Shown piece by piece: positions 39,401 through 56,260 of a stretch of DNA of 64,000 nt. The notes below the pieces were generated by a model. That model saw only the letters and a program-made list of their open reading frames with translations, was not told where the DNA came from and searched no databases. This DNA is from Lytechinus pictus (lineage: Eukaryota). The stretch spans positions 10,974,001 to 11,038,000 of the forward strand of contig NC_087254.1 in assembly GCF_037042905.1 (NCBI RefSeq), in the 5' to 3' direction. The stretch's first letter is position 1. Every line of letters begins with the position of its first letter. The position numbers and the translations under genes were made by a program.

Positions 39401-42400
39401 AAAGTCGGGCAAATGTTTTGAAGTAAAGACCAAAACTACTTGCCCGAATTGGGCAAGCAAAAATTCTCACAGTAGAATGACCAAAATTAGGGTCATGGTG
39501 GAAAAGATAAAATCACTTTGGAAAAAGAAATGTAAGAACAAGGTACATCAGTTCATGTCAAAAGAGAGAAAAAAGGGTCAATGGTTTAACCGCAATATTT
39601 TCTTTTGAAGAGGCAAACTTTTTTTCAAGGATTTTTTCGGGCAAGTGAAATAGATTTCGGGCAAGTATATTCCAACTATTCAAAAAGTTATGTAGCACCC
39701 CGACATAGCTGTCAAAGACGGATAGCTGGACCAGGTGACGTGCACACATAATGGATAAGTTACCCACAAGGCACAAGGGTAAAGATGGGTCAGTACGTTT
39801 ATTGCTAAAAGCCTGAGCTAGACTTACATGATCTTTGTATGGCTGCTTCTCGGGTGAGGTCCATTCATCCGGTAGATTCATAAACCTATCAATAGAAGGA
39901 ACAATCAAATCAAATCATTAATCAAGCCTTTCTTAAATATGAACATGTATTTACAACAATTATGTACGAGGCAATTTTTCATGACATAATTCTTCACATT
40001 AATTTAAATCCGGGTTCCACACATCACAGCTGCCGCCGCCAAACTGAGCAAATTTCTGTGATCTGTGTGTCCAACGTTCTCATGGTCACATCTAGCAGTG
40101 CACCCTCCCTACATCTTATCTTAGTCTCTAGAACCTTGCCCCTAAAAAGCATGAACCACTTTTCCTTACACAAATAGCTAGAGCAAACATAGAAATCCCC
40201 CCCCCCCCCCAAAAGAAAAAAAAAAAACTTTCAAAGCTGCTCATCAATAACAAGTTGAAAACTACTATAATAAACTACTAAAATTGTGTCATCTAATAAA
40301 TGAAAGCATGAAACAACACCCTTGTCCTTATCAAAATCAGGATTATGGCACAAGAAGATGACCCTATCAAATCACAATATAAAATGGCTACAAGAAGAGC
40401 AACTTACTTGTCAAAATCTGTGATCAAGTTAACAGCAAACGTATGCTGTTTATCAAGCTTGTACCCACTCAATTGCTTGGCAGCTTCGATGGCGTTTTCA
40501 GGTGATTTGTATTCGACGAAAACATACCTGTGGTGCAAAAATTAAAAAGGAATAAGAATTCTTAATTACGTAAAAAGGATCTCCGTTGATGCTTTGCAAA
40601 AGAACAGTAAAAACAAATCTTGGTAATAAACTTCGGGATTCTTGATCTCTCAAGATTCCTTGTACCAATACTAGAATATTTCAATTCTACAGAATTAGAA
40701 AGAAACCTAGAAAGAACTAGAAAGAAAAGGAGGAAGAACTCTCTCCTATCCTCCAACATCAGACTATTCTAGGAGCTGTATTTATCTCCATTCTTCTTTT
40801 TGTCAAAATATCAGCAAAAATTGAAATATTATTCATGTAACAGAAGGCAAAAGAATCAGTGGCGCTGCTTCTCTCATGAGCACATCACTGTGCTGTACAT
40901 GTGTACATGTTTTGTGAAATCTTTCAAGATCCGATTTTTGATTAAATTAGTTTGATTCTTCTCTAACTATTCAAAATCAAGTTTTTTGTTGGGGGGGGGG
41001 GGGGGGAATGCCCTTTACAGTGAATGGGTGTCAGCTCTCATGGGGAATAGATTATTTGTTGATCCCAGATTATGTAAAAAGCAGTGGAAATACCTGTAAT
41101 AGAGGGTAAGCTGTCGATTCGTCTATTGCCAATTCATCCACTCATCACATGGTCTACCTTTATTTAGTCTCATGCCATTCCATCCATCAACATTTCGTCT
41201 AACAACCATTTGGTCCATTAACCATTTGGTCCAATAATTACTTCGTCTAATCACCAGTTCGTCTATGACCATTACGTCTAATAACCAGTTACATGTAGTC
41301 TTATACCCATTTTCTTTTCATTCATTTCGCCCATTCAACACTTATCCAATTAGACCAAATGGTTTATGGACTAAATGGCTATTGGACCAACTGGTTATTT
41401 ACCAAAAAGGTGAGTGGACGAAATGGCAATTGGACCATGTACTATAGTGGACGAATTGATGATAGATCAAATGATAGTAGATGAGTTGGTAATTAGAGGA
41501 ATTGGCATTAGACCAATTGGAAATAAACATAACAGAGACATCTTTTGGGGAAAGCAAACTCTGTATACCAGCAAGAAGCCTCGGGCAACAGTGTCAGGCC
41601 AGGAAATCTGAGAAAATGACTACCATATAAGGCATTTTCCAGTGGCATTACATAACAAGTCATAAATCTCAATCTTCCATGGTTAACCAAGAGTGGTGTC
41701 AAATCCCCCTTGAAAGCCGACACCCCCACTAACTTCAAAGATTATTACCCTTTTGTCTTGCCATCCTCAGCATCAGGATAGTGCTCTGTGCTGATCTCTC
41801 CATACTTGCTACAAACTTTCCTGATGACGTTCTTCAGCTTTGGTAACCGATCTGCTCCAACCTGTGGTACATTGTCGATGACAATTACAGAATCGATGCC
41901 AAGAGCTTCCTTTGGTTTGGTTCGAAGTATATCACCGAGAAGTTCTGCAATGAGAGGTTTATACAAGGTTTATAATATTAAGAATGATCTGCAAGTTCGA
42001 TTAAAAATAAGTTTATATAACTTACATTGAATGCACCATTTATTCTTCAGTAACTCAAATAGCTCTGCTATTTGAGCGTAACTAAGATCTTAGACCCAGC
42101 GAGTGTACAAGGTCATAAATGTGAAGACTCACAGGAAGATCAAACTTTTTGACAGCATTCCGTGAAGAAAGTCATATACATTACTGATTCATTTTGTCAA
42201 AAAAAATGTGGAACAACTTTTTTTATGTTACAACTCAACTTTATCATCTGCCGTGCCAGCCACATCCTCTGTGAGAAATGTTTTTCCTGATCTTGTTAAG
42301 GCTTTTTTTAGTGCTCAGTTAATATTGTTACATCATCAGTTATTTGCAATGTGCGATCTAGTCTTTTGCTGAGATTAAGAGGGTGAATTTCTAGAAGACT

Positions 42401-45400
42401 AGATTAGGTTTTGTACTGTTGTACCAAATATTTAACATACAAAAATAAAAGGTCATCAATAAAAAAAAAATGAAGGGCATTTGGTCACCACAGTCAGGGT
42501 CAGAGACATAGTCCAGACACCTGGGGCAGTTTTCTGAAAACCGTGTTAGCACAAAAACGGTGTCAGCTAACACGATTGGTATTCTAAAAATAGTGTTAGT
42601 ATGAAAAACATGTGGCCCAAGTGGTAACACCGAGTAGGTCATGAAATACGCAGTGCGCAACGTGCAACCCCCATACGCGGTGTTAGGGAGGAACATAACA
42701 TGAAATTTGGTATTCTGAAAATGGTGTTAGCTAAAATTTTGTTCAAAGATAAGTAGATAACACAAAAATTCAACACTGCGATAAGGAGGTTAAGTTAGGG
42801 AACACGATGGCTGCACTTTTCTAGCAGACGCAAACGTCAAAAAGAACATATCCGGGCATAAAGCTATCATCTGGCAGAATTTACTGTAATTTTCTTTCAT
42901 TTAGGGATGCCAGTTGGAATTGATCAGAGGGCCTGAAAATCACCTAGAATACAATAATTTGTACACAAAAATGCTATAACTACGGCCTGAAAATAAATTG
43001 CCAGAGCCTGAATTTCAGGCTTTTGCCTGAAGACTGGCATCCCTGTTTCATTATTCCAGCTTTATTTTCCATCTCCCTTTTCTCTACTAACAATGATTAA
43101 AGTTTAACAAAAATTTCTTTGGAATTTCCTGTGAAAATACACTTCAAATGCATCTTTAATTTGGATTAATTCAAATCATTATCATATATGCTCATGAGTT
43201 ATTTATTTGGTTACTTTTTGCCATAATATAAAAAAGACAAAAGGAGAGAAAGAAAATTAAAAACATCTAAAAAGGAGAGAAAGAAAATTAAAAACATCTT
43301 TAAAAAAGCATGAACGGAAATTAAAAAGAATGGAATTAGCGATTAGGGAACTCTTCTATAATATTCACAATTTTTTAAAACCCTTTTTCAATGGTTACAT
43401 GTATATATAGTTCCATTGATACAATTTTTTAAACTCTCAATGCTTCTAGGTAATCCTTAATTCATCTATCCCGCCAGTCAATCTATATGCTTCGGATGTG
43501 GGAGGATGGGGAGGGGGGGGGGAAGGGGCTGATCGCTACACGCATCAAATTTTAATTCTGTCTCCTGTTATAATTTCGTACCCATGCTGTCTGAAATAAT
43601 CCATTCTTAATTGTCACAATCACCCCTCCCCATGTCTCTTTCTCGCTCTAACTTTTTATTTAGCTGTAGATCTAGGCTCTATGCGTTTCCAAAATGATGT
43701 AACAATGCAGGCTTCATGTCATCGTGCGCACACTCCCCTTTTCCCTGAAAAGATTTTTTCTTTAACAGCGCATTTGATTGGCTTAAAAAGATGCAGATTG
43801 GGAGGAGCTGAAGCTAGATTAACACGAAATGAGATAACACGGTTTTCAGAATCCGGATTTGGGGGGTATTAGGGGCGTGTTAAATCAGAGATAACACGGT
43901 CAATATTTATACCAAAGTTAACACGTTAACACAGTTTTCAGAATACCGCCCCAGCAGTAACACAACTCCACCAGCGCATCCAGAAACTGAACTTGACGTC
44001 TTGACTCGAGACGAAAATAAATGGATGAACACAAAAATGAAGCCAGGCTTTTTTCATGTTTTTTTTTGGGGGGGTTCTTCTTATCTTATCAAAATATCAG
44101 CAACGTACTAGTACAGGTTAACACATGAACTGTAACATTAAAGCTTTCAACCGCTATTCCATACTAGTAGGGTGTCTGGACGTTTTTCAGAAATCACCTA
44201 TTTTGTGAATTAAATCACTGTCACGTAGCAGAAAGTGAAGAGAATATCTGAAATAACATGTAAATCAAGTTTCATAACTCACAAGCATTTAAATCCAGAG
44301 ATATTTGCTTCTAAAGTTTGGCACATTTTCAGATTAAAACGTAAGCGATATCACACCGATAGTGGCACATTTTGCTTGACCTAAAACACACACAGAGCTG
44401 CTGTACGCCGCATCGCATTGAAGGGGCCGGGGCGGAGTTGGAAGGGCGCGCAATACATTCATTACCGCTTTCGTTGTCAAGTTTGCCTTTCAAATACGCA
44501 ACTTATCAACTGCTCATGAATAATGCGTTCGTAGACGGACACGTCTGGGTCACTGCTCTAGTTGAAAGGTCACATATACGTCACAATAGAGATTACGAGT
44601 ACTTCGCCAAGCACAAGGTTGCATCTTATTTAGAGTGGAGATCAGTGGTTGCATCACAATGCATAAATCATCGGACTTGCATTCAAGTACATGTCGTATG
44701 TGCACACAATAATGGTGTGTGGATGTACCATGTGATTTACGTGCACCGTGCCGTACCGCGATATGCCATTGCTTTTGTGTACTACCAAGGAGCTTCTTGG
44801 TACTACCAGTACCAGGGATTCCCCGATGTGCGACGGCAACCCACGTGCAGCATGGAGTGATGAGTCATTAGTATGACGTACCAGAATGACATTGCAATAC
44901 GTCATAATAATGTTCTTACCACCATAGGCGGCGGCGGGACAGGTTCCCCCCTAAATTTGAGGTGGGGGGGGGGGTGGTCCCCCTAAATTTTAGTTGATAA
45001 TCTGTTTTATTTTATTTTTTTCTGCTTGTCAATTTTATTTCCTGCGTCCCCCCCCTAAAGTCAGCGTGGACCCCCCTAAAATGTTTCTGCCCCCCCCTAA
45101 AATTTTAGTTGATTGCCTTTTTTTTTTTGCTTGTCAATTTTGTTTAACCTGTTATCATCACAAAATTTCGGGTGGAACCCCCTAAATTTTTTGACTTCGC
45201 CGCCAATGCTTACCACACGCCAGATCAATTTCCTCATGTCAATTTAAGGTCTATACTTGACTTAATAAAATGTTTGAAAGGTGAACTCAGGGCTGAAAAT
45301 GATTTCTGAATAAATAGGGTAAGATTCACCAAGCAAAGGCTGGAAATTTTTATGAAAATCTGATAAAAAGTAACTAAGTTATTGAATTTTAAAGATTATT

Positions 45401-48400
45401 GATGTTTTGTGAAGATAATTATATGCACGTCGTCATCAATATTCATTAGGCCGATTATGTCACATCCCTACTCTTTTTTCTTAAGATATCACATATAAGA
45501 TGTGAGTATGGTATGTCTCCTTAACAAGCCTTGCAGCAAAGAGTATCAAATGTATTAAATCTGTTGTCAGTTTTTGTTTTCATTCTTGGAGGACAAATTG
45601 AACATAATTTTATAATATACGAAAAAATAAATTGGGATATTTCACGTGACACGATCACTTTGCTCATGATTGAATATTGATGAAGACAGTAAAGAGTTGT
45701 TTCACTGAAATCTTAAGCATGCTGTAACCTTGATATTAAGTGTCCAATTTTAATAATGTCGACTTTTGTTTCAAATAGTATTATTTTTCACATAGAGTTT
45801 CATTCCGATTTCATAACGATCATTGCTGATTTGATTTATACCCCCCCCCCTCACCCCACATACATACCCTAAGTCTTACGTTATTTATCATCATTGTCAA
45901 CCACCATCGATCACGCACTATTGTCATATTTTTATTAGGGCAATTCCATAAAATATGTACGTTCGAACCTCTATATTTGGGATCTTCATGAAATTTTCGG
46001 TCTCTATGATTCTTGGTTCTTTTGACAGTCTGTAACGCTGTCAAATGACCATGACTTGGCCAGTTTATTAAGTGATGTAAGACTTTAGAAAAATGGGGGT
46101 CGAATGTACAGAAAGCTTGATCATTTTACGGAATTGCCCATTATCCAAACCATCATGCAATCAAAACCATGCACACCCACTCGTACATCATCACCCTGAG
46201 TTCATTTATCACAAAGGCCAATCATCATCGTGAATCCATTTCATCACTTAGGAAAAAAAAGAAATAGTCATTAAAACTTTTTCTCTGTTTGTATATGTCC
46301 ATAAAACCATAAACATCAGAATCCACACTTCATTTCATGCAGGCAAATCATCACCATCAAAACACTTCATCATGGCGCATTATGTTTACCATCATTTTTA
46401 GATGCAATTAAACTTCAAGATGAAAATATAACTTTATTCTACTTTTCTTTATTTCAGATTTATTAGGAAACGATAGAGGGGTTTCGATCGTCGGACCTAA
46501 GAAATGAGAATCACCGAGAACTCAAAAATAAAACACATATATAGAGCTTGTATTTCTGTTTCCTTGTCAACTATTCAAGTCATCTTTATTCTAAAATCGA
46601 GTTGACATATATGATATATGCTGTTTCATTTCAAGATGCTTAACTCACACAAAATAACGGAATAATACCAAGTGAAATATTTTAAACCGTTCACAATTGT
46701 AAAATGTCCACAAGGTTTTTCTGAAGAACCTGTATATAATACTACTGAGAGTAACTGCCTCAATATCTTGTCAACTTTCAATTGGGGAAAACATTGAACA
46801 CACGAACTACCATACGCATTATTCTTTGCATGAAAATTGCTGTATTATTTGGAAGTTCAGCTGAATATTAAGCACAATTTGGGACACGACGTGGTTTTTA
46901 TGAATAGGCCTTTCAAGCCTCTTGCGTTTTCATTTTGTGTATCCCCAATTATTCATTTTCAAAACATTGAGTTCCCCATGAAATTGGCGGCATCACAGAT
47001 CGATCACCGCAAGGGGCTTACAGAGTGTATATATAGTGCATTTTTTTCTCTAATCTGCACATACCGTTACGACTCTTTACATTCTTATAAACTTATTATC
47101 ACAGAGTATATAATCATCGTATTATCATGGCCATATACAGCCGAGGCGATAATACTTTATTTGAGCAACAGAATCCCTACCCGACTGCTCTACCTTATTA
47201 CATAATATGTATTTACACAGGTATTGATTCATTTACAAAGACAATATATTTATAGAATAAACTCGTCTTTCTATAAGAGTAAAAGTTCAGTTCAATTTGT
47301 GCATATTATTCACGCAATTAATTACTTCGTAATTACTGCGTAAGGGCCTATACTCCCAATTCAGAATAATATGTTTGCCAAGAGCTTGCTTGATTACTGC
47401 TGTGTTGTATAATAAATAAAAAGAGCTCCAGTGTTGACAGTCTTCGATTTATACATAACGCGATGATCTTCCACCACAAGATGATAACTTGCTGAACTCA
47501 AAAGGTAAGTCCACTCTTCATGCTCTTTATTTTCGAGCGTCTGTTCAACTAACTCTATTTCTGCATGAATTGTGTTTACACTAAATTGGTACAAATAATG
47601 TGTTCACGTGTGTTCGTGATGGTCATAACGTCAAAGGTCATCTATTGGTCAAAATATCATGTCATACATGTAAGCGATAGAGACCACAGACCCGTGAACG
47701 ACCATGTTCATGAATGCATAGCAGAACTAAATGCTTCAGTCACTATTTTCTCCTTCCGGAAAAAAAATATAATCGAGCATTCATTGCAACTCGATATTCA
47801 ATACTAGTATAGGTATATGTTATAATAACTTTATATTTCTGAAGCTTTTTTTAAATTCCATCTATTACAATCGAGTATACATTGTAGCTCGATTTATGCA
47901 GCTAATTCTTTATATCAGTTGCCGTTTTCTTGCATCTATTAAAATAAGCTCATTCTGGCAATCATACCTTATATAATTCGATTTATAGGCCCAACTAAAC
48001 TTTCTCAAAAATTCGCACATCTCCTTTCCAATAATCTTCCAACAATGCTCCATCCCATGTATTTTCTTCGTCATCGCTTTCATCATTTAAACTCTCGTAT
48101 TCCACCTTGCAAGATTTATCTACACCATAGCCATCTTCTGCCTCAACTACATAACCGGTAAACCATACCTTTGCGTTGTCTACTTCCCATTTGTGTCTTA
48201 TCTTATACCCTACTAATTCTCTTGCTGATATATCTTTAACATACATATCCCCACTGTTCAAGTCTTCAACTACATCATTTTTGGGATACGAGTATACAGT
48301 TTGTGTATTGGACAAATAGACAAAATTCATCGACTCATTGTTTTTACTGAGGACGAATGCGGAGTACCAGTTTTCTCCTCCATCATCTTCTGTTAAATGT

Positions 48401-51400
48401 TGAACAATTTTACCAACTAAATCATTGTAATCTACGTTTCGGCCTCTTTTCACTCTTTTTCTTGACTTGTTTTCTATCTCAGATCTCTTCCTTTTCATTT
48501 CTTCTTTGAACTGGTATACCCTCTCCTCCGGTGCGAGCAGGATTTCCTCTACTTCGTTGTCATCCTTGTCAATTTCTTGGGTTCTTTCTCTGCTCCTTCT
48601 CACGACTGAAATAAGCTGTTCCTTTAACTCTTCCCACGTCTTCACTCTACCCCTTTCTGTGAAATTGAAGATACCTTCTGTGTTTTTCTCTCCGAACACA
48701 TATCGTCTAGCTTTCAATTGTACTTTCAGCATTTCCAATTTAATGTCATTGTTCTTCCTAGCGAGTCCTTGATCTATTTCATTTTCTGACATCCATATAC
48801 CACCACATACATTTCTGACTTCCTCGTATATATGTTCCTTTCTTACCGTTTCCTTTTCTTCTTTTTGGACCTTGCTATCTCTCCTTTCTCTTACTTTTTT
48901 CTCCCTTTCTTCCCAAATGTGCTTCGCCCTCTGACAATATTCCTTCCTTTGCTTGACAACCTGCTTTCTAGCTATACTCATGTACTCCGCCCTTTTCTCT
49001 TCTTCCAATTCTCTGACCCATTGATTTGTATTGTTCTTAGTGTACATTATAATGCTTTCCACTGCATAAATACTCGCCCTTGGCTTCTCTCTCATTATTC
49101 TATCCATCATTCCGAAATCTCGTTCAACGGATACATTTGTCTTAGGTACCCCACTAACTTCGTTTTCATTAACATCACTATATTGAGAAGAAATGTGCTC
49201 TCCAAGGAGCCTACTCGTAATCATGACATAACTACTGAATATAAGTTCGAGAACTTGTTTTGTAACTGCATTGTCTCCTATGAGAAGTGATTCATATACT
49301 TCATCCCTTTGAACTGGTATATCGTGGAATAACACGGCTGTGCCGTCCAATAATGGCGATGAGTCGACTGCCCATTCTTCAAATTTTGACAACATGATCT
49401 TGTATCTCTCGTCCATTGTCGTTATTCTCTCCTTACCCTCCAATACTCGCCACAATGGGGCTGTTACAAACTTATTTACTAGGCCCAATGCCCTACATCC
49501 AGTTAAAAAGTGGGGGACATTTAGATCTGAGTCTACTGCTTTAATTAATAAGTTATCTTCCCTATGATCTGCAAAAAAATCCTTTAAATCATGTCTTAAA
49601 TAATAAACACCTCCTCCATTATGAAATAAAATATTAAATCTATTACCTTTAAAGGGTGCTAACGGAACTAACGTTTTGCCCCTTTCCTTCAGAAATGCTC
49701 GGAAATGTACGGGCTTCCCTGATTTCTCACATCCTCTGTCTTGAATCGATTTACACACCGTTCTTACTAACCGAACTATCCCACCTTCTCCACCTTTTGG
49801 CGCCACTCCAAGCTTCTGTGCCCCTACCTGTTCTCCATTGAACACCATATCTTCCCAGACTTTCAACGTTTGTCCCGCCTGGTCTGCCAACCCGACTACA
49901 AAATGTAATCCGCAAAAGTAATTATTCATTTTTGAAAGTGATTCCCTTTCCAAGTCTGATAATTGTGCCCATTCTCTAACAACTGTTGGCAATATCTCTC
50001 TCCTATAATTTTGTAGAAGCTCATTAAATTTCTTTTGTACTATGTGCCTATCACTGATTGTATTTTTTATTCTTTTAATTACATTATTTATTTTACTTCC
50101 ATCATTAGTAACCAAACACACATCTTCTATTACCGTCTTCATCGTTTCAAGCATTTCCTCTGCTGTACCCCCAACCCCTGCTCTGACGCCTAAGACCAAA
50201 CACTCCCCACTACTTAAATGAATATCATACGCCCCATAGTGATGACCATACTTGGTAGTACCATCTCCTCCAACTGTCATATCAACCTCCTTCTCATCTA
50301 AGATTTTATTAGCTGCTTGTATTAAACTGAGAGCTCTGGCTTCCATATACATAGCAGATCCAAAATCCTTCTTTGGTACAGACTTAATATTTACATTACA
50401 GAGCCCTTCTAGTACAGTTTTCACAACCTCACCACCTTTCCTAGTACTAACACCCATTGAACAAACTAATTCTTGTACTACTGAACGAACTTCATCACTG
50501 TATCTCCCTCCTTCCTTTAACTCAACAACGTGCGAATCGGCCTTCAATCTTTCTTCTAATTTGTTGATCTTCCCAGTCATTTTCTGCATTTTCTTTTTCA
50601 TTCGAATGTTTTCTTTTCTAAGCATGTAATTAATCTTGTTCTTCGCTTTCAAATAACTTCGGCTCTGTTGCCTTCGTCTTACTAAGTCACCGTCTCTTCT
50701 CACAATTTTTTTAAGCATGAATATTCTATTCTCGAGGCCAGTGATTACTTTCCTTTTTTTGCACAATTCTATGTTCAATCTTATGATGGTTTCTTTTCTA
50801 ACTTTCATCGCATTCAACATCCTATCATTCCGCTTCTTTATATTCCTATGTTTGGCACATGCCTTTACAAACCTTACGCTGCATGCATCTATTTTTTCTT
50901 CAAGTTTTTCAATTTTTTTCTTCAACCTTATAACAACTTTCTTCATATATAACGCATCTACTTTAAATCCACTCTGACGAGGTCTAACACAGTTCCGTCT
51001 ACATTGACGGCACACCCTTGAAACAGTACTCTTTCTGAATTCTATTCTGATGTTTTTTTTCTGTTTCTTTTTCATTTCTTTTCTAGCGAACACAAACACA
51101 TCTTCCATTATACCTTCATTCTTGTTTACTCTTTTGTTGTTCTTTCTTACATTATCACACAAACTTCTGATCTTTTTGTACAAATTCTGATTGGAGATCA
51201 GCGTCGTATCTACATCAAAAAAACCTTCTAATAGAATCTTGAATTGTCCAGTCGTTAAATCCCTCTTCCTTCCCCATGAAAATAATTCTAGGACAGCGCC
51301 GTTCGTGAGGCTCTCCCATCCTATCTTCTCCCTATCATATTCCCCACACAACACGGCCTGCACATCTCCCTCGTAAATACCCAAACGATTACAATGTGGC

Positions 51401-53857
51401 CCTACTTCTGACAGTGTTTCGAACTCAGTTGTTTTTTCATTGCCCTTGCCCTGATTACATTTCTTTTCGCTCTTTCTCTTCAAATTACCAAGATGCACGT
51501 GACGATATGTATTGTTTTGAAACATATTTACAAACGCCAGCAGACAGTGCTGCCGTGACTCATCGCGAGGTCTTTGCTGTTCGGCATCACAATAATTAAA
51601 AAAATGCTTGATATCTCGATAGCGGAGACAGAGATCATCTTTTTGGGGCCTGTCATTGTAACAGGAGGTTGCAAATGAACGTGAATCCGACATGGTATTA
51701 CGGATTATATAACTTGGAGTATACTGGCAAGTCAATTTTTTGCAAGATTAAACACACGGGATCGGATTAATCTATACAAAATTCGAAAGGCCAAACCTAT
51801 TTTATTGACTTGCAGTTGCACGAACGGTGACGGTGTGAACTTGCGGAAGTATGAGGCTGAGTAACGGGCTGGTTCTCGGGTGCGTAGACGAAGAACGCGG
51901 GAGGAGAAACCGGAGAAGCACAGCCACAAAATATCAAAGAAAGGGATGATATATCACGAAATTTTGATGATCCGAGAAGCAAAGACCTCGCGAATCGCGA
52001 TACATCCACTCGATGTACAAATCAGTGGATGCTTGAAGAACAACACACTCGATAAAAAGAGTGAAATTGACATAAATATAGAGCAGTCGGGTAGGGAAAT
52101 CCTCTACACAAAACATGCACAAATTATATGAACATAAAAATCTCAACATTATTAAAACACATCGTCAATGAATGCACACACAACAAACACAACCGCGTGG
52201 TAATTCTCATCATAGCCAACGTACATGTTCCACCTCTACACACAGACATTCACACACCAAGTCGTAGTCACGCGGGCTCCCCATTCACTCATGTGTTTTC
52301 AAACTCGCGCGCTTGTGCTCACGTGGACGGCATGCCGCGAATTTGCATATGATGCAAATTAATTTGGGATTTACGCGCTCTACGTATGGCTTCGTTGTCA
52401 AGAAAATAGACGCGTACACCACGCCTCTAGATTTCGCTTGTCTGCACAAGGGTATTTTCAAATTGATTTTGCATTGTGATCTCGTGTAATCAGCCCAAAA
52501 CTAAATGCACCATCGAAATCAGCGATCCCGGAAATACTTAAGTCCAGCTGGACAAGTTTGTGGCACCCTCGATTGCTCTGCTGTCGCAAGGGTAAGCAGC
52601 AATTTCGTATTATCTTTACTTCATAATATAAGAGAAAACTTGTCCTTAGAAGCATATTATAGGAAATTTAATTCCCTTTCGAACCATATCATTTTTGTTT
52701 TAAAAAAATGATCAGATCACAATTTTCTGAGCGTTCAAAGGGGACCTTGTATTCAAAAAGTGTGTGCCATTTTCGCTTCAGTACGCGACGCGCATTGACG
52801 TGCGTGTATTAGGTATGGGCAAAGAGCTCCCACAGCTATCGCTGAGGCTATCGTTTGATCGTCCAGACACCCTAATACTAGATCCGCCCTGCAATCCACC
52901 CCCTTCCCCCTAATATTAATAATGATCTTCTGACTGAGCTGTGCACTGTGGCCACGTCTAAACTCGACACTCGACGTTACATGTACCGTACCGTATGGGT
53001 ACTAGTATTCAACCCGGCATAATTCAAACATTTTGACATATTCCCCAAAATATTTAGAAATAGGGAATTCATCTTACTTTCACACCTTTATTATTTCCAG
53101 GGTAATCTGTTGTCGATATTTTCTTTGTCAATCTGTCGACTGTATGCGCGGAGGATCGAATTATGCGGCGATGGCCTTTTGCACTGAATGGTACTAGTAT
53201 TCAACCTAGTGAGGATTGATAGCAAATCTCAAAAGGGTTTAAATTGCTAAATTAGATCTAGATCTATGTAAGTCTCTGGCTTTGATTAATTCCCTGTTTG
53301 GTCTCATCTCAAATGGTCTAGTCCATAGTCTGATGGGACAAGGGCAGATTGAGAGACAGGGCCATCTTTCATCGCTAGGTTGAATACTAGTGCTGACGGG
53401 TTGAATACTAGTACCAAAATCCGTCGCCGTATAATTCGATCGCCCGCGCACACAGTCAACTGGTTGAAGAAAAAAATAACGGAAAAAGAATAACCAGCAT
53501 TTGCTCTTGGAAATAAGACGGGTCTGAAATTCAGGTAAATTCTATATTTCTATATATTTGAGGAAACTCTCCAAACGGGTTGAATACTAGTGCCCTTACG
53601 GTATGTAGCTAGCCCGAGTTTCATTCATTCAATCATTGCACACACATGATCACACATGACAACTCAGCATATGCTTCAAAAACATCTCTATTTCTCAACG
53701 TACCTTCATCTGTTACATTGTCAACGTAGCCATCCGGATCGTTAAAGTCTGGCTCTTCCTCATATCCATTTTCCTCTTCATCATTTTGGTCATTTTCGTG
53801 AGTCCGGTCCATTTTATTTCTGCCTGCTGTTCTCTCCCTCTCGCTGCCTTCCGCCAT
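24468..53857 (-). CDS. EIF3B: Eukaryotic translation initiation factor 3 subunit B, ~704 aa, 16 exons
   Basis: Exons 53857-53704, 41944-41749, 40527-40408, 39885-39828, 38450-38322, 37171-37014, 36083-35952, 34024-33911, 32483-32273, 30376-30181, 29376-29298, 28485-28341, 27897-27772, 26232-26155, 25456-25348, 24577-24468 join in frame (2115 nt). RRM ([21 protein letters not shown]) and beta-propeller motifs ([32 protein letters not shown]) are typical of eIF3b. Confidence 0.97.
26439..26589 (-). ncRNA. H/ACA snoRNA copy, subfamily A (SNORA65/snR34-like), eIF3b intron 13
   Basis: Hairpin-H box (AGAGTA)-hairpin-ACA+3 nt on the - strand, sense to eIF3b. Confidence 0.85.
26933..27682. mobile_element. 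Non-autonomous piggyBac-type element, copy 2
   Basis: TTAA TSDs; same TIRs and body as 21992-22744. Confidence 0.85.
29091..29243 (-). ncRNA. H/ACA snoRNA copy, subfamily B, eIF3b intron 11
   Basis: Same two-hairpin H/ACA architecture; 5' pocket CTGACAC. Confidence 0.85.
29738..29890 (-). ncRNA. H/ACA snoRNA copy, subfamily B, eIF3b intron 10
   Basis: Near-identical to the intron 11 copy; H box and ACA intact. Confidence 0.85.
31057..31207 (-). ncRNA. H/ACA snoRNA copy, subfamily A, eIF3b intron 9
   Basis: H box AGAGTA and ACA intact; compensatory GTGACC/GGTCAC stem. Confidence 0.85.
31560..32320. repeat. Tandem repeat (99-bp core unit) of the eIF3b exon 9 3' end plus 5' splice site
   Basis: CTCACCTTCTT (reverse complement of AAGAAG|GTGAG) at 31569, 31695, 31830, 31929, 32028, 32127 and 32268 (the last is the true donor). 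Confidence 0.9.
32723..32874 (-). ncRNA. H/ACA snoRNA copy, subfamily A, eIF3b intron 8
   Basis: H box and ACA intact. Confidence 0.85.
32935..33380. mobile_element. hAT-like MITE
   Basis: TIR CAGGGTTCCCA / TGGGAGCCCTG; internal TTTTCCCTGA repeats. Confidence 0.55.
33389..33828. repeat. Direct tandem duplication of ~220 bp
   Basis: TCTACTGCAT..GCAAGAACTCATTTTTCTCTATCCTCAC starts at 33389 and again at 33607. Confidence 0.85.
34143..34301. mobile_element. MITE, same family as 8330-8488
   Basis: Colinear with 8330-8488; contains a perfect GTTACCATGGTAAC. Confidence 0.75.
34314..34727. mobile_element. Palindromic Harbinger-like MITE
   Basis: Nearly full-length inverted repeat GGCC..AATTCACAAAGGTGGTT; second copy at 35252-35573. 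Confidence 0.8.
34918..35071 (-). ncRNA. H/ACA snoRNA copy, subfamily B, eIF3b intron 7
   Basis: H box and ACA intact; 5' pocket CTGACAC. Confidence 0.85.
35252..35573. mobile_element. Palindromic Harbinger-like MITE, copy 2
   Basis: TIR GGCCCAAATT; 3-bp TSD TTA. Confidence 0.8.
36493..36644 (-). ncRNA. H/ACA snoRNA copy, subfamily A, eIF3b intron 6
   Basis: H box and ACA intact; the apical stem pairs by G-U wobbles only on the - strand. Confidence 0.85.
37732..37881 (-). ncRNA. H/ACA snoRNA copy, subfamily A, eIF3b intron 5
   Basis: H box and ACA intact. Confidence 0.85.
38849..39323. mobile_element. TIR element (Harbinger-like MITE)
   Basis: GCCCTTTCACACG ... CGTGTGAAAAGGCCC ends. Confidence 0.55.
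39352..39702. mobile_element. hAT-type MITE, copy 2 of 1608-2039
   Basis: Same TIRs and body, with internal deletions. Confidence 0.8.
42524..43951. mobile_element. TIR element (GGGCGGTATTCTGA family) with a nested small MITE at 42902-43045
   Basis: GGGCAGTTTTCTGAAAACCGTGTTA / TAACACAGTTTTCAGAATACCGCCC, CWG flanks. Nested TAGGGATGCCAGT / ACTGGCATCCCTG is flanked by a TTTCATT duplication. Confidence 0.7.
44923..45208. mobile_element. hAT-type MITE nested inside the 8.7-kb element
   Basis: TIR CATAGGCGGCG / CGCCGCCAATG; perfect 8-bp TSD CTTACCAC. Confidence 0.85.
47995..51693 (-). CDS. DDE transposase (hAT-like), ~1232 aa, with N-terminal basic coiled coil and C-terminal tandem Spin/Ssty-like Tudor modules
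   Basis: Single-exon ORF inside the TIRs. Catalytic-type motifs GGDGTT (D ~50264), ISDRH (D ~50051), FCGLH (CxxH ~49908) and SVERDF (E ~49124). C-terminal [18 protein letters not shown] and [22 protein letters not shown]. Confidence 0.88.
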   Translation of the reverse strand: MSDSRSFATSCYNDRPQKDDLCLRYRDIKHFFNYCDAEQQRPRDESRQHCLLAFVNMFQNNTYRHVHLGNLKRKSEKKCNQGKGNEKTTEFETLSEVGPHCNRLGIYEGDVQAVLCGEYDREKIGWESLTNGAVLELFSWGRKRDLTTGQFKILLEGFFDVDTTLISNQNLYKKIRSLCDNVRKNNKRVNKNEGIMEDVFVFARKEMKKKQKKNIRIEFRKSTVSRVCRQCRRNCVRPRQSGFKVDALYMKKVVIRLKKKIEKLEEKIDACSVRFVKACAKHRNIKKRNDRMLNAMKVRKETIIRLNIELCKKRKVITGLENRIFMLKKIVRRDGDLVRRRQQSRSYLKAKNKINYMLRKENIRMKKKMQKMTGKINKLEERLKADSHVVELKEGGRYSDEVRSVVQELVCSMGVSTRKGGEVVKTVLEGLCNVNIKSVPKKDFGSAMYMEARALSLIQAANKILDEKEVDMTVGGDGTTKYGHHYGAYDIHLSSGECLVLGVRAGVGGTAEEMLETMKTVIEDVCLVTNDGSKINNVIKRIKNTISDRHIVQKKFNELLQNYRREILPTVVREWAQLSDLERESLSKMNNYFCGLHFVVGLADQAGQTLKVWEDMVFNGEQVGAQKLGVAPKGGEGGIVRLVRTVCKSIQDRGCEKSGKPVHFRAFLKERGKTLVPLAPFKGNRFNILFHNGGGVYYLRHDLKDFFADHREDNLLIKAVDSDLNVPHFLTGCRALGLVNKFVTAPLWRVLEGKERITTMDERYKIMLSKFEEWAVDSSPLLDGTAVLFHDIPVQRDEVYESLLIGDNAVTKQVLELIFSSYVMITSRLLGEHISSQYSDVNENEVSGVPKTNVSVERDFGMMDRIMREKPRASIYAVESIIMYTKNNTNQWVRELEEEKRAEYMSIARKQVVKQRKEYCQRAKHIWEEREKKVRERRDSKVQKEEKETVRKEHIYEEVRNVCGGIWMSENEIDQGLARKNNDIKLEMLKVQLKARRYVFGEKNTEGIFNFTERGRVKTWEELKEQLISVVRRSRERTQEIDKDDNEVEEILLAPEERVYQFKEEMKRKRSEIENKSRKRVKRGRNVDYNDLVGKIVQHLTEDDGGENWYSAFVLSKNNESMNFVYLSNTQTVYSYPKNDVVEDLNSGDMYVKDISARELVGYKIRHKWEVDNAKVWFTGYVVEAEDGYGVDKSCKVEYESLNDESDDEENTWDGALLEDYWKGDVRIFEKV
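52989..53603. mobile_element. Long palindromic MITE (TA-flanked, Tc1/mariner-like)
   Basis: TACCGTATGGGTACTAGTATTCAACCCG / CGGGTTGAATACTAGTGCCCTTACGGTA, plus internal inverted blocks. Confidence 0.7.
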
Positions 53858-55000: not shown

Positions 55001-55193
55001 TTAAAGATCAAGTCCACCCCAGAAAGTTGATTTGAATCAATAAAATCAAACAACAATAATATAGGATTTCCATGCTACCCAACTGGTTCGGCCAGTTAGC
55101 CAATTTCCAGTTGCCCAACATGGCCCCAAGCAGTGGCGTACCTAGGATTTTCCACAGGGGGGCAAAACCGTCCGCCAAAAAATTTGACAAGCG

Positions 55194-55225
<32 letters not shown>

Positions 55226-55274
55226 TCTTCGATATCAAAAGTAAAGGATTCCGTACCTGAAAAAAAATTAGACA

Positions 55275-55308
<34 letters not shown>

Positions 55309-56260
55309 TCTTCGATCAAAAATAAAGGATTCCGTACCTGAAAAAAAATTGACAAGCAAAAAAAAAAAAAAAAAAAAAAAAAGGTCTTCAAGCTCGTCAG
55401 GGGGGCAATAAAGGTCTTCAAGCTCGTCAGGGGGGGGGCAAAAAGGTTTTTCAAGCCCGTCAGGTGGGGCAAATATACGTCTTTTGCATTGGTTGTGACT
55501 CGTCAGGGGGGGCAGAGTGCCCCCCTGCCCCCCCCCCCCCCCCGTAGGTACGCTAGTGGCCCCAAGTTAGGATTTCCATGCAGTTACCCAACTGGTTCCA
55601 GTTAGAAGTCATTTTCCAGTTGCCCAACTGGTGCAGTTAGGATTTCCAGTTACCCAACTGGTTCCAGATAGATCATTCCAGTCGGAATTCCAGTTACCCC
55701 ACTGGTGATCCATTTACGATTTCCAGTCACCCTACTGGTTCCAGTTATAGAAATCATTTCCAGTTGTAAGTCATTTCTGGTTCCAGTTAGGATTTCCTGT
55801 TGCCCAAATACTGGTTTCAATTGGTTTCAACTAGAAATTGTTAAATTCCAGCTTAAACCAATTGAAACCAGTTGGAAATCCAACTGGTTTCAATTGGATT
55901 TTGGTCCTGGGTGCTGAAAATTTCATCAACGGTCGGATGTAAAATAAGAATTAAAGTTATATGTCACTAAAGTCACTAAAGAAATATAACTCTTGTTTCT
56001 CATGACAATAAGGAGAAAATTGAAATATTTCATGAGATACAAAATAAATATTAGTGAGTGGGTGATGTCATCAGTCCCCTCATTTGTATACTGACCAGGA
56101 TGTACATGCATATTTTTGTGAAATTTTAAAAGAGAAATTTTGAAATGTCATAACTTTAATTCTTATTTTACATCCGATTTCAATGAAATTTTCAGTGTAA
56201 TTTTGATTTTTCTCTACTTATTAAAATCAACTTTTTGTTGGGGTGGACTTTGCCCCTTAA
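55001..56260. mobile_element. TTAA-flanked (Kolobok-like) element interrupted by nested insertions
   Basis: The ends resemble 17706-18300; the body is split by an ~860-bp insert rich in CCAGTT/CAACTGG repeats. Confidence 0.6.
55131..55558. mobile_element. hAT-type MITE with poly-A tandem units
   Basis: TIR CAGTGGCGTACCTA / TAGGTACGCTAGTG; perfect 8-bp TSD GCCCCAAG. Confidence 0.85.

What the first reader, a model, noticed from the sequence alone, without database searches (positions are those of the whole stretch)
47995..48423. Transposase fused to two Spindlin (Spin/Ssty)-like Tudor modules: candidate histone-mark-guided DNA transposon
Seen: the last ~140 aa are two related repeats, [44 protein letters not shown] and [46 protein letters not shown]. 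Known (from memory): SPIN1 module 2 reads MIGKAVEHMFE..EWRGMVL..ITY..LYMYQLLDDYKEGDLRIM and binds H3K4me3 through an F/W/Y/Y aromatic cage. By eye the second repeat keeps aromatics (W, F, Y, W) at all four cage positions. Inference: the transposase may read methyl-lysine or methyl-arginine marks to choose targets. Consistent with this, the element sits about 1 kb from the eIF3b start codon, where H3K4me3 is expected. Spin/Ssty repeats were first described from vertebrate proteins, so an invertebrate transposon-borne version bears on spindlin origins. I do not know of this fusion being characterised, but cannot exclude it.
Basis: partly seen in the sequence, partly recalled or inferred. Interest (0 to 1): 0.88.

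Follow-up and report, generated by a model that had tools for sequence, protein, structure and literature searches.

The report
hAT-like transposase with spindlin reader modules
An intact, recently mobile 8.7-kb DNA transposon sits in the first intron of eIF3b, and its hAT-like cut-and-paste enzyme ends in two spindlin-type (Spin/Ssty) Tudor-like modules with largely intact methyl-lysine cages, a fusion kept across a whole echinoderm/mollusc transposon family and, as far as I could find, not described before.

Summary
The ORF at 47995-51735 (-) is uninterrupted (1246 codons, first ATG at codon 15). Its last ~140 residues are two Spin/Ssty-type modules.

- **Sequence:** a profile of this tail and 18 homologous tails hits human Spindlin-1 at E 2.6e-20.
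- **Structure:** an AF2 model (pLDDT 90.5) has spindlins 1-4 as its top 46 PDB matches. Each module superposes on SPIN1 Tudor 2 (Z about 9).
- **Cage:** module 2 has aromatics at all four SPIN1 cage positions (W/F/Y/W). Module 1 has three (T/Y/Y/Y).

The body is a DDE transposase of hAT architecture. Its best PDB match is Hermes, and all top 30 Swiss-Prot models are hAT-derived. D491, D562, C608, H611 and W762 are invariant and E871 nearly invariant; no Pfam family matches.

The element runs from 44168 to 52874, with 15-bp TIRs. Four complete copies have four different 7-bp TSDs, and copies are 98-99% identical.

69 of 93 homologues carry one or two such C-terminal modules; most of the rest are cut short.

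Histone-mark-guided targeting remains an inference. The only support is anecdotal: the element lies in eIF3b intron 1, 983 bp from the ATG. The same scan noted similar fusions elsewhere in this genome.

The parts
44168..52874 (-). Complete DNA transposon, 8707 bp. The transposase gene is on the minus strand.
   Evidence: TIR pair. The full length aligns at 98-99.5% to copies on C16 and C14, and at 88-94% to C2.
44168..44182 (+). Terminal inverted repeat TAGGGTGTCTGGACG, at the 3' end relative to the ORF.
   Evidence: There are 12 exact matches genome-wide against 1 for the control pattern.
52860..52874 (-). Terminal inverted repeat TAGGGTGTCTGGACG, at the 5' end relative to the ORF.
44161..44167 (.). 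Target-site duplication ATACTAG, left copy.
   Evidence: The other complete copies have GTAGGAG, ATATTAG and ATAAAGG.
52875..52881 (.). Target-site duplication ATACTAG, right copy.
47995..51735 (-). Uninterrupted open frame of 1246 codons plus stop. The first ATG is at codon 15 (51693).
50584..51693 (-). N-terminal region (residues 15-384). It holds a short, weakly conserved domain (G..C..LGI ... L.NG.VLEL) followed by a long K/R/E-rich coiled coil. No BED finger or other known DNA-binding domain was detected.
   Evidence: Alignment A3, about 18% identity. A profile search against the PDB gave only coiled-coil noise. No Pfam match.
48706..50583 (-). hAT-like DDE catalytic core (residues 385-1010). 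It is an RNase H fold split by an all-alpha insertion domain. Key residues are D491, D562, C608-x-x-H611, W762 and E871.
   Evidence: Invariant columns in 40 sequences (residue numbers). AF2 model pLDDT 89.7 with a beta1-3/alpha/beta4/alpha/beta5 topology. Hermes E 9e-7, with the top 12 PDB matches all Hermes. All top 30 Swiss-Prot AFDB hits are hAT-derived.
48424..48705 (-). Charged helical linker (residues 1011-1104) between the core and the reader modules.
   Evidence: A long helix continues out of the core model, residues 528-593 of the model. Sequence.
48220..48423 (-). Spin/Ssty module 1 (residues 1105-1172). At SPIN1 positions F141/W151/Y170/Y177 it has T1115/Y1124/Y1140/Y1148. The equivalents of H139, Y179 and D184 are kept.
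47998..48219 (-). Spin/Ssty module 2 (residues 1173-1246). At the cage positions it has W1183/F1192/Y1213/W1227. The equivalents of H139 and D184 are kept. An acidic loop ([11 protein letters not shown]) is inserted between strands 3 and 4.

Best explanation
Shown:
- This is an autonomous-looking cut-and-paste DNA transposon, 8.7 kb long, with 15-bp TIRs and a 7-bp TSD.
- Its single long ORF encodes, from N to C: a coiled-coil N-terminus, a DDE transposase core of hAT (Hermes/Ac) architecture, a charged helical linker, and two Spin/Ssty Tudor-like modules.
- The fusion lies in one continuous reading frame and is a conserved trait of the whole transposase family.

Inferred:
- The modules act as readers of a methylated basic ligand, most likely a methyl-lysine or methyl-arginine on a histone tail.
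- They do so through the aromatic cage, which is complete in module 2, together with the retained His and Asp pocket residues.
- This tethers the transposase, or the excised transpososome, to marked nucleosomes and so biases where the element integrates. The parallel is the chromodomain of chromoviral integrases.
- Which mark is read (H3K4me3 as for SPIN1 Tudor 2, or H3K9me3/H4K20me3/Rme2a, which SPIN1 also reads) is not determined.
For: Transposon:
- Inverted TIRs.
- Four complete copies with four different 7-bp TSDs.
- Copies 98-99.5% identical along the whole 8.7 kb.

Transposase:
- Confident AF2 core model.
- Best PDB match is Hermes at E 9e-7; RAG1, P-element, ISCth4 and Mos1 follow.
- All top 30 Swiss-Prot models are hAT-derived.
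- D, D, C..H and W are invariant and E nearly invariant.

Reader:
- Profile against SPIN1, E 2.6e-20.
- The top 46 Foldseek hits are spindlins.
- Each module matches SPIN1 Tudor 2 at Z about 9.
- Cage positions are W/F/Y/W in module 2 and T/Y/Y/Y in module 1, with H139 and D184 equivalents in both. The pocket definition comes from PMC8213585.

Conservation:
- 69 of 93 homologues carry one or two modules at the extreme C-terminus; most of the rest end within or right after the core.
- Across the family, the Y170 position is aromatic in 84 of 85 modules. The F141 position is aromatic in 33 of 36 single modules and 21 of 24 second modules.

Context:
- The window copy lies 983 bp from the eIF3b ATG, inside intron 1.
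Against: - No binding or targeting data exist.
- The window protein's own modules fall below Pfam's Spin-Ssty threshold.
- Module 1 lacks the first cage aromatic.
- The W151-equivalent is only half conserved in second modules (E in 8 of 24), and the Y177-equivalent is often L or C.
- The register at W151 is ambiguous by one residue: an invariant W precedes the aligned F/Y.
- I could not measure cage geometry, because model coordinates are not exposed.
- Only seven insertion sites are known, and their positions relative to genes are unknown except for one.
- The CpG o/e excess of the flanks disappears against the neighbouring 1-3 kb, and no genome-wide background was available.
- Hardly any RNA reads matched the element.
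Confidence: 0.5

Rival explanations
1. The architecture is as described, but the Spin/Ssty modules do not choose targets through histone marks. They bind something else: a methylated or unmethylated non-histone host protein (as SPIN1 binds SPINDOC), nucleic acid, or the transposase itself. They would then serve regulation, nuclear retention, oligomerisation or evasion of silencing.
For: - Cage positions 2 and 4 are variable across the family, and module 1 lacks one aromatic.
- A conserved acidic loop in module 2 could contact a basic partner without needing methylation.
- Tudor-like and SH3-like barrels in other transposition and relaxase proteins appear among the structural matches: TnsB at Z 7.7 and TraI at Z about 6.
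Against: - The best sequence and structure matches are specifically the methyl-lysine-reading Tudor 2 of spindlins, far above Agenet, SETDB1 or TnsB.
- The H139 and D184 pocket equivalents and 3-4 cage aromatics are retained.
Confidence: 0.33
2. The modules read a repressive mark (H3K9me3 or H4K20me3, both also bound by SPIN1). They would direct the element into heterochromatin as a safe haven, or sense the silencing of its own copies, rather than read the promoter mark H3K4me3.
For: - Solved structures show SPIN1 in complex with H4K20me3 and with H3K4me3K9me3 peptides (entry titles).
- Chromoviral integrases use a royal-family reader in this way (established knowledge).
- The PDB list includes the BAHCC1 TTD with H4K20me1 as a near match.
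Against: - The window copy lies in a housekeeping gene's first intron, 1 kb from the ATG.
- Insertion flanks are not CpG-depleted. This is weak evidence.
Confidence: 0.12
3. This is not a mobile element's transposase but a domesticated host gene, or an artefact of reading two unrelated ORFs as one.
For: - No Pfam transposase domain matches.
- Very little RNA support.
Against: - A single uninterrupted frame spans the core and the modules.
- Perfect TIRs occur with different TSDs at four loci, and copies are 98-99% identical, some with stops or nested insertions.
- The fusion recurs in 69 homologues.
Confidence: 0.03

Closest known systems
Spindlin family (SPIN1-4; Pfam PF02513 Spin/Ssty), especially SPIN1 Tudor-like domain 2, the H3K4me3 reader
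   Same: - Same barrel fold, Z about 9 at 23-26% identity.
- Same sequence signature: LVGK.V.H ... W ... Y ... Y ... L.(E/D)DY..GD.RI.
- Aromatic cage positions and the H139/D184 pocket residues are retained.
   Different: - Two modules, not three. The global superposition is poor (TM about 0.35), so the inter-module packing differs.
- The modules are appended to a transposase instead of forming a free 26-kDa protein.
- Module 1 has Thr at the F141 position.
- Module 2 has an acidic loop insertion and Gly at the Y179 position.
- The window protein itself scores below Pfam's cut-off.
hAT superfamily transposases (Hermes, Ac, and their domesticated relatives ZBED, FAM200, KIAA1586)
   Same: - RNase H-like DDE core interrupted by an all-alpha insertion domain.
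- A CxxH motif after the second D, and a conserved W in the insertion domain.
- The catalytic E lies in an S-x-ERxF(G/S) helix.
- The TIR begins TAGGG, which fits the hAT YARNG rule as I recall it.
- T at TSD position 2 and A at the penultimate position in most sites.
   Different: - 7-bp TSD in 4 of 4 complete copies, instead of 8 bp.
- No match to the Pfam hAT dimerisation domain or to any hAT model in 40 members.
- No BED finger.
- About 370 aa of coiled-coil N-terminus.
- C-terminal reader modules.
Reader-domain-bearing retrotransposons: chromoviruses (Ty3/Gypsy integrase plus chromodomain) and Gypsy-10_Ec32 of Ectocarpus with a C-terminal Tudor domain (PMC12477816)
   Same: A mobile-element recombinase carries a C-terminal royal-family histone-reader fold. 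This is the proposed logic of tethering integration to marked chromatin.
   Different: - Those are LTR retrotransposon integrases; this is a cut-and-paste DDE transposase.
[quoted passage not shown]
Dada superfamily (6-7-bp TSD)
   Same: TSD length of 6-7 bp, and a C/DxxH motif after the second D.
   Different: Dada has no TIRs, uses DxxH, and inserts only into small-RNA genes. This element has 15-bp TIRs and CxxH, and its seven target sites are unrelated to each other.

Membership tests
Spin/Ssty (PF02513) / spindlin-type Tudor-like module | Significant sequence match to the family model | tested here: inconclusive
   The window protein alone scores 13.8 bits against a cut-off of 25. The family profile hits SPIN1 at E 2.6e-20. 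Homologues and a same-genome paralogue pass the cut-off, at 27-39 bits.
Spin/Ssty (PF02513) / spindlin-type Tudor-like module | Tudor-like five-stranded barrel superposable on spindlin modules | tested here: met
   AF2 pLDDT 90.5. The top 46 Foldseek hits are spindlins. Both modules score Z 8.7-9.2 against SPIN1 residues 126-194.
Spin/Ssty (PF02513) / spindlin-type Tudor-like module | Four-residue aromatic cage (SPIN1 F141, W151, Y170, Y177) | tested here: met
   Met at the level of sequence alignment only. Module 2 has W/F/Y/W and module 1 has T/Y/Y/Y. 3D geometry was not measured.
Spindlin proteins proper (SPIN1-4, Ssty) | Three tandem modules packed in a triangle, as a free small protein | tested here: not met
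   There are two modules at the end of a 1246-aa transposase. The global TM to spindlins is about 0.35 with rmsd about 15 A.
Spindlin proteins proper (SPIN1-4, Ssty) | Binding of methylated histone peptides | not testable with these tools
   This needs a peptide array or ITC.
hAT transposase superfamily | DDE RNase H fold with an all-alpha insertion domain, a CxxH motif and a conserved W | tested here: met
hAT transposase superfamily | Sequence match to hAT family models (for example the hAT C-terminal dimerisation domain) | tested here: not met
   No hAT Pfam family matched in any of 40 members at E up to 1, nor in the full protein.
hAT transposase superfamily | 8-bp target-site duplication | tested here: not met
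   The TSD is 7 bp in all four complete copies.
hAT transposase superfamily | Short TIRs beginning YARNG | tested here: met
   The TIR is TAGGGTGTCTGGACG. The rule itself is recalled from memory.
Dada superfamily | No TIRs; insertion into small-RNA genes | tested here: not met
   The element has 15-bp TIRs and diverse targets. The family definition comes from PMC3706591.

The most novel reading that the evidence does not exclude
The Spin/Ssty module is ancestrally a transposon-borne reader. Vertebrate spindlins would then be a domesticated, triplicated offshoot of the C-terminal tail of this hAT-like transposase family, rather than the transposon having captured a host spindlin exon. Three observations are consistent with this:
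- Every strong Spin/Ssty hit in this invertebrate genome is transposase-linked, or is a lone fragment.
- No three-module spindlin gene was detected in it.
- Spindlin modules sit interleaved among transposon modules in an unrooted, poorly resolved tree.
Probability: 0.15. Interest if true: 0.85.

Novelty: new variant of a known kind. Interest (0 to 1): 0.72.

Why it matters
Reader domains that steer integration are well established for LTR retrotransposons, where chromodomains do this. They are hardly documented for cut-and-paste DNA transposons.

A 2025 paper still describes a Gypsy element as the first TE with a Tudor domain. Here a whole family of DNA transposons in echinoderms and molluscs carries spindlin-type modules, with copies young enough to suggest recent activity.

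If the modules read a histone mark, three things follow:
- The family would be a natural example of chromatin-state-guided DNA transposition.
- It would offer a compact reader-plus-transposase design for targeted integration tools.
- It would give a handle on where the vertebrate spindlin fold came from.

The transposase core is also of interest on its own. It has a hAT fold, but a 7-bp TSD and no Pfam coverage.

Tried and rejected
- **Pfam and PDB searches with single sequences.** Pfam on the single protein and a PDB phmmer search of the tail gave nothing usable. Only profiles worked.
- **Core profile against PDB sequences.** No hit. The link to hAT is by fold only.
- **N-terminal region.** The N-terminal profile gave only coiled-coil noise, and no DNA-binding domain was identified.
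- **Dada superfamily.** I considered it because of the 6-7-bp TSD and rejected it.
- **A second gene in the 3.8-kb 3' part of the element.** tblastx against two paralogous loci found only a short DNA repeat.
- **RNA evidence.** 0, 0 and 7 reads in three RNA runs, with about 6% of each run read. There was no positive control for two of them, so this says nothing about expression.
- **Module phylogeny.** With 68 columns the tree is unresolved and gives no direction of transfer.
- **CpG o/e of insertion flanks as a proxy for unmethylated, promoter-like DNA.** Flanks average 0.81 against 0.52 in the window's gene body (p 7e-4). They equal their own 1-3-kb surroundings (0.88). This is not evidence either way.
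- **Organism names for distant homologues.** The look-up of encoding contigs returned none.
- **Literature.** Searches for spindlin, Ssty or Spin-Ssty together with transposase or transposon found nothing relevant.
Full report
**1. The observation**

The minus strand carries one uninterrupted frame from 51735 to 47995 (1246 codons plus stop). The first ATG is at codon 15.

These codons split into two units: residues 1105-1172 and 1173-1246. The units resemble each other only weakly in sequence (28% over 29 aa, E 3e-4). Taken alone, the tail gives sub-threshold Pfam hits to two Tudor-clan families (Agenet 23.9 bits, Spin-Ssty 13.8 bits) and nothing in the PDB by phmmer.

**2. The modules are spindlin-type**

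A search with the central part of the protein found 93 homologues, 28-49% identical. They come from sea urchins, a sea cucumber, a sea star, mussels, a clam, and many unnamed assemblies. Several carry PF02513 above Pfam's cut-off at their very C-terminus.

I aligned the window's tail with 18 homologous tails (A1). Three results followed.
- The A1 profile hits human Spindlin-1 at E 2.6e-20, then spindlins 4, 3 and 2. The next family (Agenet proteins, SETDB1) is 17 orders of magnitude weaker.
- The AF2 model of the tail is confident (pLDDT 90.5, pTM 0.82) and shows two barrels, each followed by a short helix.
- Foldseek's top 46 PDB matches are all spindlins. VIA-align superposes each module separately on SPIN1 residues 126-194, the H3K4me3-binding Tudor 2, with Z 8.7-9.2, rmsd 2.0-2.9 A and 23-26% identity.

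The whole-tail superposition is poor (TM about 0.35). The two modules therefore do not pack like two of spindlin's three.

**3. The aromatic cage**

The SPIN1 Tudor 2 cage is F141, W151, Y170 and Y177. The wider pocket adds H139, Y179 and D184 (PMC8213585). I aligned all modules to one HMM.

| SPIN1 position | Module 1 | Module 2 |
|---|---|---|
| H139 | H | H |
| F141 | T1115 | W1183 |
| W151 | Y1124 | F1192 |
| Y170 | Y1140 | Y1213 |
| Y177 | Y1148 | W1227 |
| Y179 | Y | G |
| D184 | D | D |

Two caveats apply. An invariant Trp directly precedes the residue aligned to W151, so the register there is uncertain by one. I also could not inspect coordinates.

Across the family:
- The Y170 position is aromatic in 84 of 85 modules.
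- The F141 position is aromatic in 33 of 36 single modules and 21 of 24 second modules, but is T/S/C in first modules.
- The W151 and Y177 positions are less constant.

Module 2 has a conserved acidic loop between strands 3 and 4, which is of lower confidence in the model.

**4. The body is a hAT-like DDE transposase**

Residues 385-1010 align across all homologues. In 40 sequences, D491, D562, C608, H611 and W762 are invariant and E871 nearly invariant.

The AF2 model (pLDDT 89.7) has the RNase H order beta1-beta2-beta3-alpha-beta4-alpha-beta5. The first D lies on beta1 and the second directly after beta4. A large all-alpha insertion follows, and the E sits on the returning helix.

Foldseek's top 12 PDB hits are all Hermes (best E 9e-7, about 600 aligned columns). 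RAG1, P-element transposase, ISCth4 and Mos1 follow at E of about 0.02 or weaker. In Swiss-Prot AlphaFold models, all 30 best hits are hAT transposases or hAT-derived genes, including KIAA1586, FAM200, Ac, ZNF862, ZBED1/4/5, ZMYM1/6, SCAND3, EPM2AIP1, RICESLEEPER and GTF2IRD2.

At sequence level nothing matches:
- No Pfam family in 40 members.
- No PDB hit for the core profile.
- The N-terminal 370 residues are a weakly conserved small domain plus coiled coil, with no BED finger.

**5. It is a mobile element**

TAGGGTGTCTGGACG occurs at 44168-44182 (+) and 52860-52874 (-), and nowhere else in the window. Genome-wide there are 12 exact matches against 1 for the control pattern. They form four pairs (C2, C10 which is this window, C14 and C16) plus solitary ends.

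Each pair is flanked by a different 7-bp duplication: ATACTAG, GTAGGAG, ATATTAG and ATAAAGG. Read on the appropriate strand, six of the seven known sites have T at position 2, and five have A at position 6. This recalls the hAT nTnnnnAn target rule (from memory), one base shorter.

The copies compare as follows.
- The full 8.7 kb aligns to the C16 copy at 98-99.3%.
- It aligns to the C14 copy at 98.6-99.5%. That copy holds two nested insertions.
- It aligns to an older C2 copy at 88-94%.
- The C16 ORF has one stop, and the C2 ORF has several.
- The window ORF is the only uninterrupted full-length frame among the close (84% identity or more) copies that the search returned.

The genome also holds divergent paralogous families with long open frames:
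- C4: 40% identical, 1234 aa.
- C15: 31% identical, 975 aa, ending in a module that scores 39 bits on Pfam Spin-Ssty.
- Others at 25-27% identity.

No second conserved gene was found in the 3.8-kb 3' part of the element.

**6. The fusion is a family trait**

I built an HMM from the modules. It finds one or two of them at the extreme C-terminus of 69 of the 93 homologues. Twenty-five, the subfamily nearest the window, have two. Forty-four have one. The remaining 24 mostly end within or just after the core, so they are truncated predictions.

An exhaustive profile search found 832 proteins at E of 1e-3 or better. These include vertebrate-type three-module spindlins, many fragments of this transposase family, and giant multi-Tudor proteins that score by summing many weak repeats.

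In this genome, the Pfam model finds only three places. Two lie at the end of transposase homologues, and one is a lone fragment. No three-module spindlin gene appeared.

A tree of 105 modules (68 columns) is unresolved. Spindlin T1, T2 and T3 each form a group, and these groups sit in a polytomy with several transposon groups.

**7. Context**

eIF3b is on the minus strand.
- Its RRM exon is at about 41745-41944.
- Exon 1 starts with the ATG at 53857 and ends at 53704, with donor GTACGT.
- Exon 2 starts at 41944, after TTGCAG.

The element therefore lies inside intron 1, in the same orientation as the gene. It is 983 bp from the start codon and makes up 8.7 kb of an 11.8-kb intron. This is the kind of place where H3K4me3 is expected, but it is a single case.

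Flanks of the seven insertion sites have CpG o/e of 0.81 against 0.52 for the window's gene body. They do not differ from their own wider surroundings, and I could not obtain a genome-wide background. RNA reads were too few to interpret.

**8. Mechanism and alternatives**

- **Shown:** the architecture, the mobility, and conservation of the fusion and of most pocket residues.
- **Inferred:** the tail reads a methylated histone tail and tethers the transposase to marked chromatin. This is the logic known from chromodomain integrases.
- **Main rival:** the barrels bind another partner, or regulate the enzyme.
- **Variant:** the mark is repressive rather than H3K4me3.
- **Excluded by the data:** domestication and artefact.

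**9. Novelty**

I found no paper linking spindlin or Spin-Ssty to a transposase. A 2025 study reports a Gypsy element with a Tudor domain as, to its authors' knowledge, the first such TE (PMC12477816).

First-stage notes of this scan flagged the same kind of fusion on two other pieces of this genome. This agrees with the paralogues I found.

I class it as a new variant of a known kind: a reader-domain-bearing mobile element, in a new combination (hAT-like DDE transposase plus Spin/Ssty). The transposase clade itself departs from canonical hAT in TSD length and has no Pfam coverage.

Noticed in passing
window 41944-53857 (-): eIF3b intron 1 (53703 to 41945, 11.8 kb) consists mostly of the 8.7-kb transposon, inserted in the same orientation as the gene. 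Exon 1 is 53857-53704 and exon 2 starts at 41944.
   Followed up: yes
window 52989-53603: A set of nested inverted repeats covers about 615 bp. The arms share GGTACTAGTATTCAACCCG, with 86-nt and 78-nt arms at 72-76% and 28-nt arms at 93% complementarity. It lies between the transposon's right end and eIF3b exon 1 and looks like a foldback or MITE-like element.
   Followed up: no
window 45005-45145 and 55177-55391: T-rich and A-rich tracts contain the motif GCTTGTCAATTTT / AAAATTGACAAGC, repeated in inverted orientation. One set is inside the transposon's 3' region and the other is about 2.3 kb outside its other end. A roughly 110-bp stretch at about 45300-45420 is also repeated twice at a paralogous locus (L031).
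   Followed up: partly
G000:C4:6408793-6411897 (L006/L031); G000:C15:27473049-27475361 (L030): Divergent paralogous transposase families occur in the same genome with long open frames: 40% identity over 1234 aa, and 31% identity over 975 aa. The C15 protein ends in a single module that passes Pfam Spin-Ssty at 39 bits. Their TIRs were not determined.
   Followed up: partly
G000:C10:36096876-36096968 (L029:5817-5996, -): A lone Spin/Ssty-like fragment (ISHRFAENEY...YKILEEYKNGNI, followed by a stop). No transposase homology was detected within 5 kb on either side. It could be a remnant or part of a host gene.
   Followed up: partly
G000:C8:27636239 and G000:C8:39109294: Two element ends 11.5 Mb apart on one contig share the same 20-bp flank. 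This suggests a segmental duplication, or an assembly duplication, of an insertion locus.
   Followed up: no
window 52591: Three RNA reads of run X23 leave the element at 52591 and continue into unrelated sequence (AAACGTAATCTTCATG...). A contig of run X1 leaves at 52593. This could be a splice site, or a junction in another copy, within the element's 5' region.
   Followed up: no
P0095, P0110, P0111, P0113, P0116: Giant proteins of 1400-6300 aa with 12-20 tandem Tudor/Agenet-type repeats surfaced in the profile search. One (P0110) also has SAM, EF-hand and cytidine-deaminase domains. Their organisms are unknown.
   Followed up: partly
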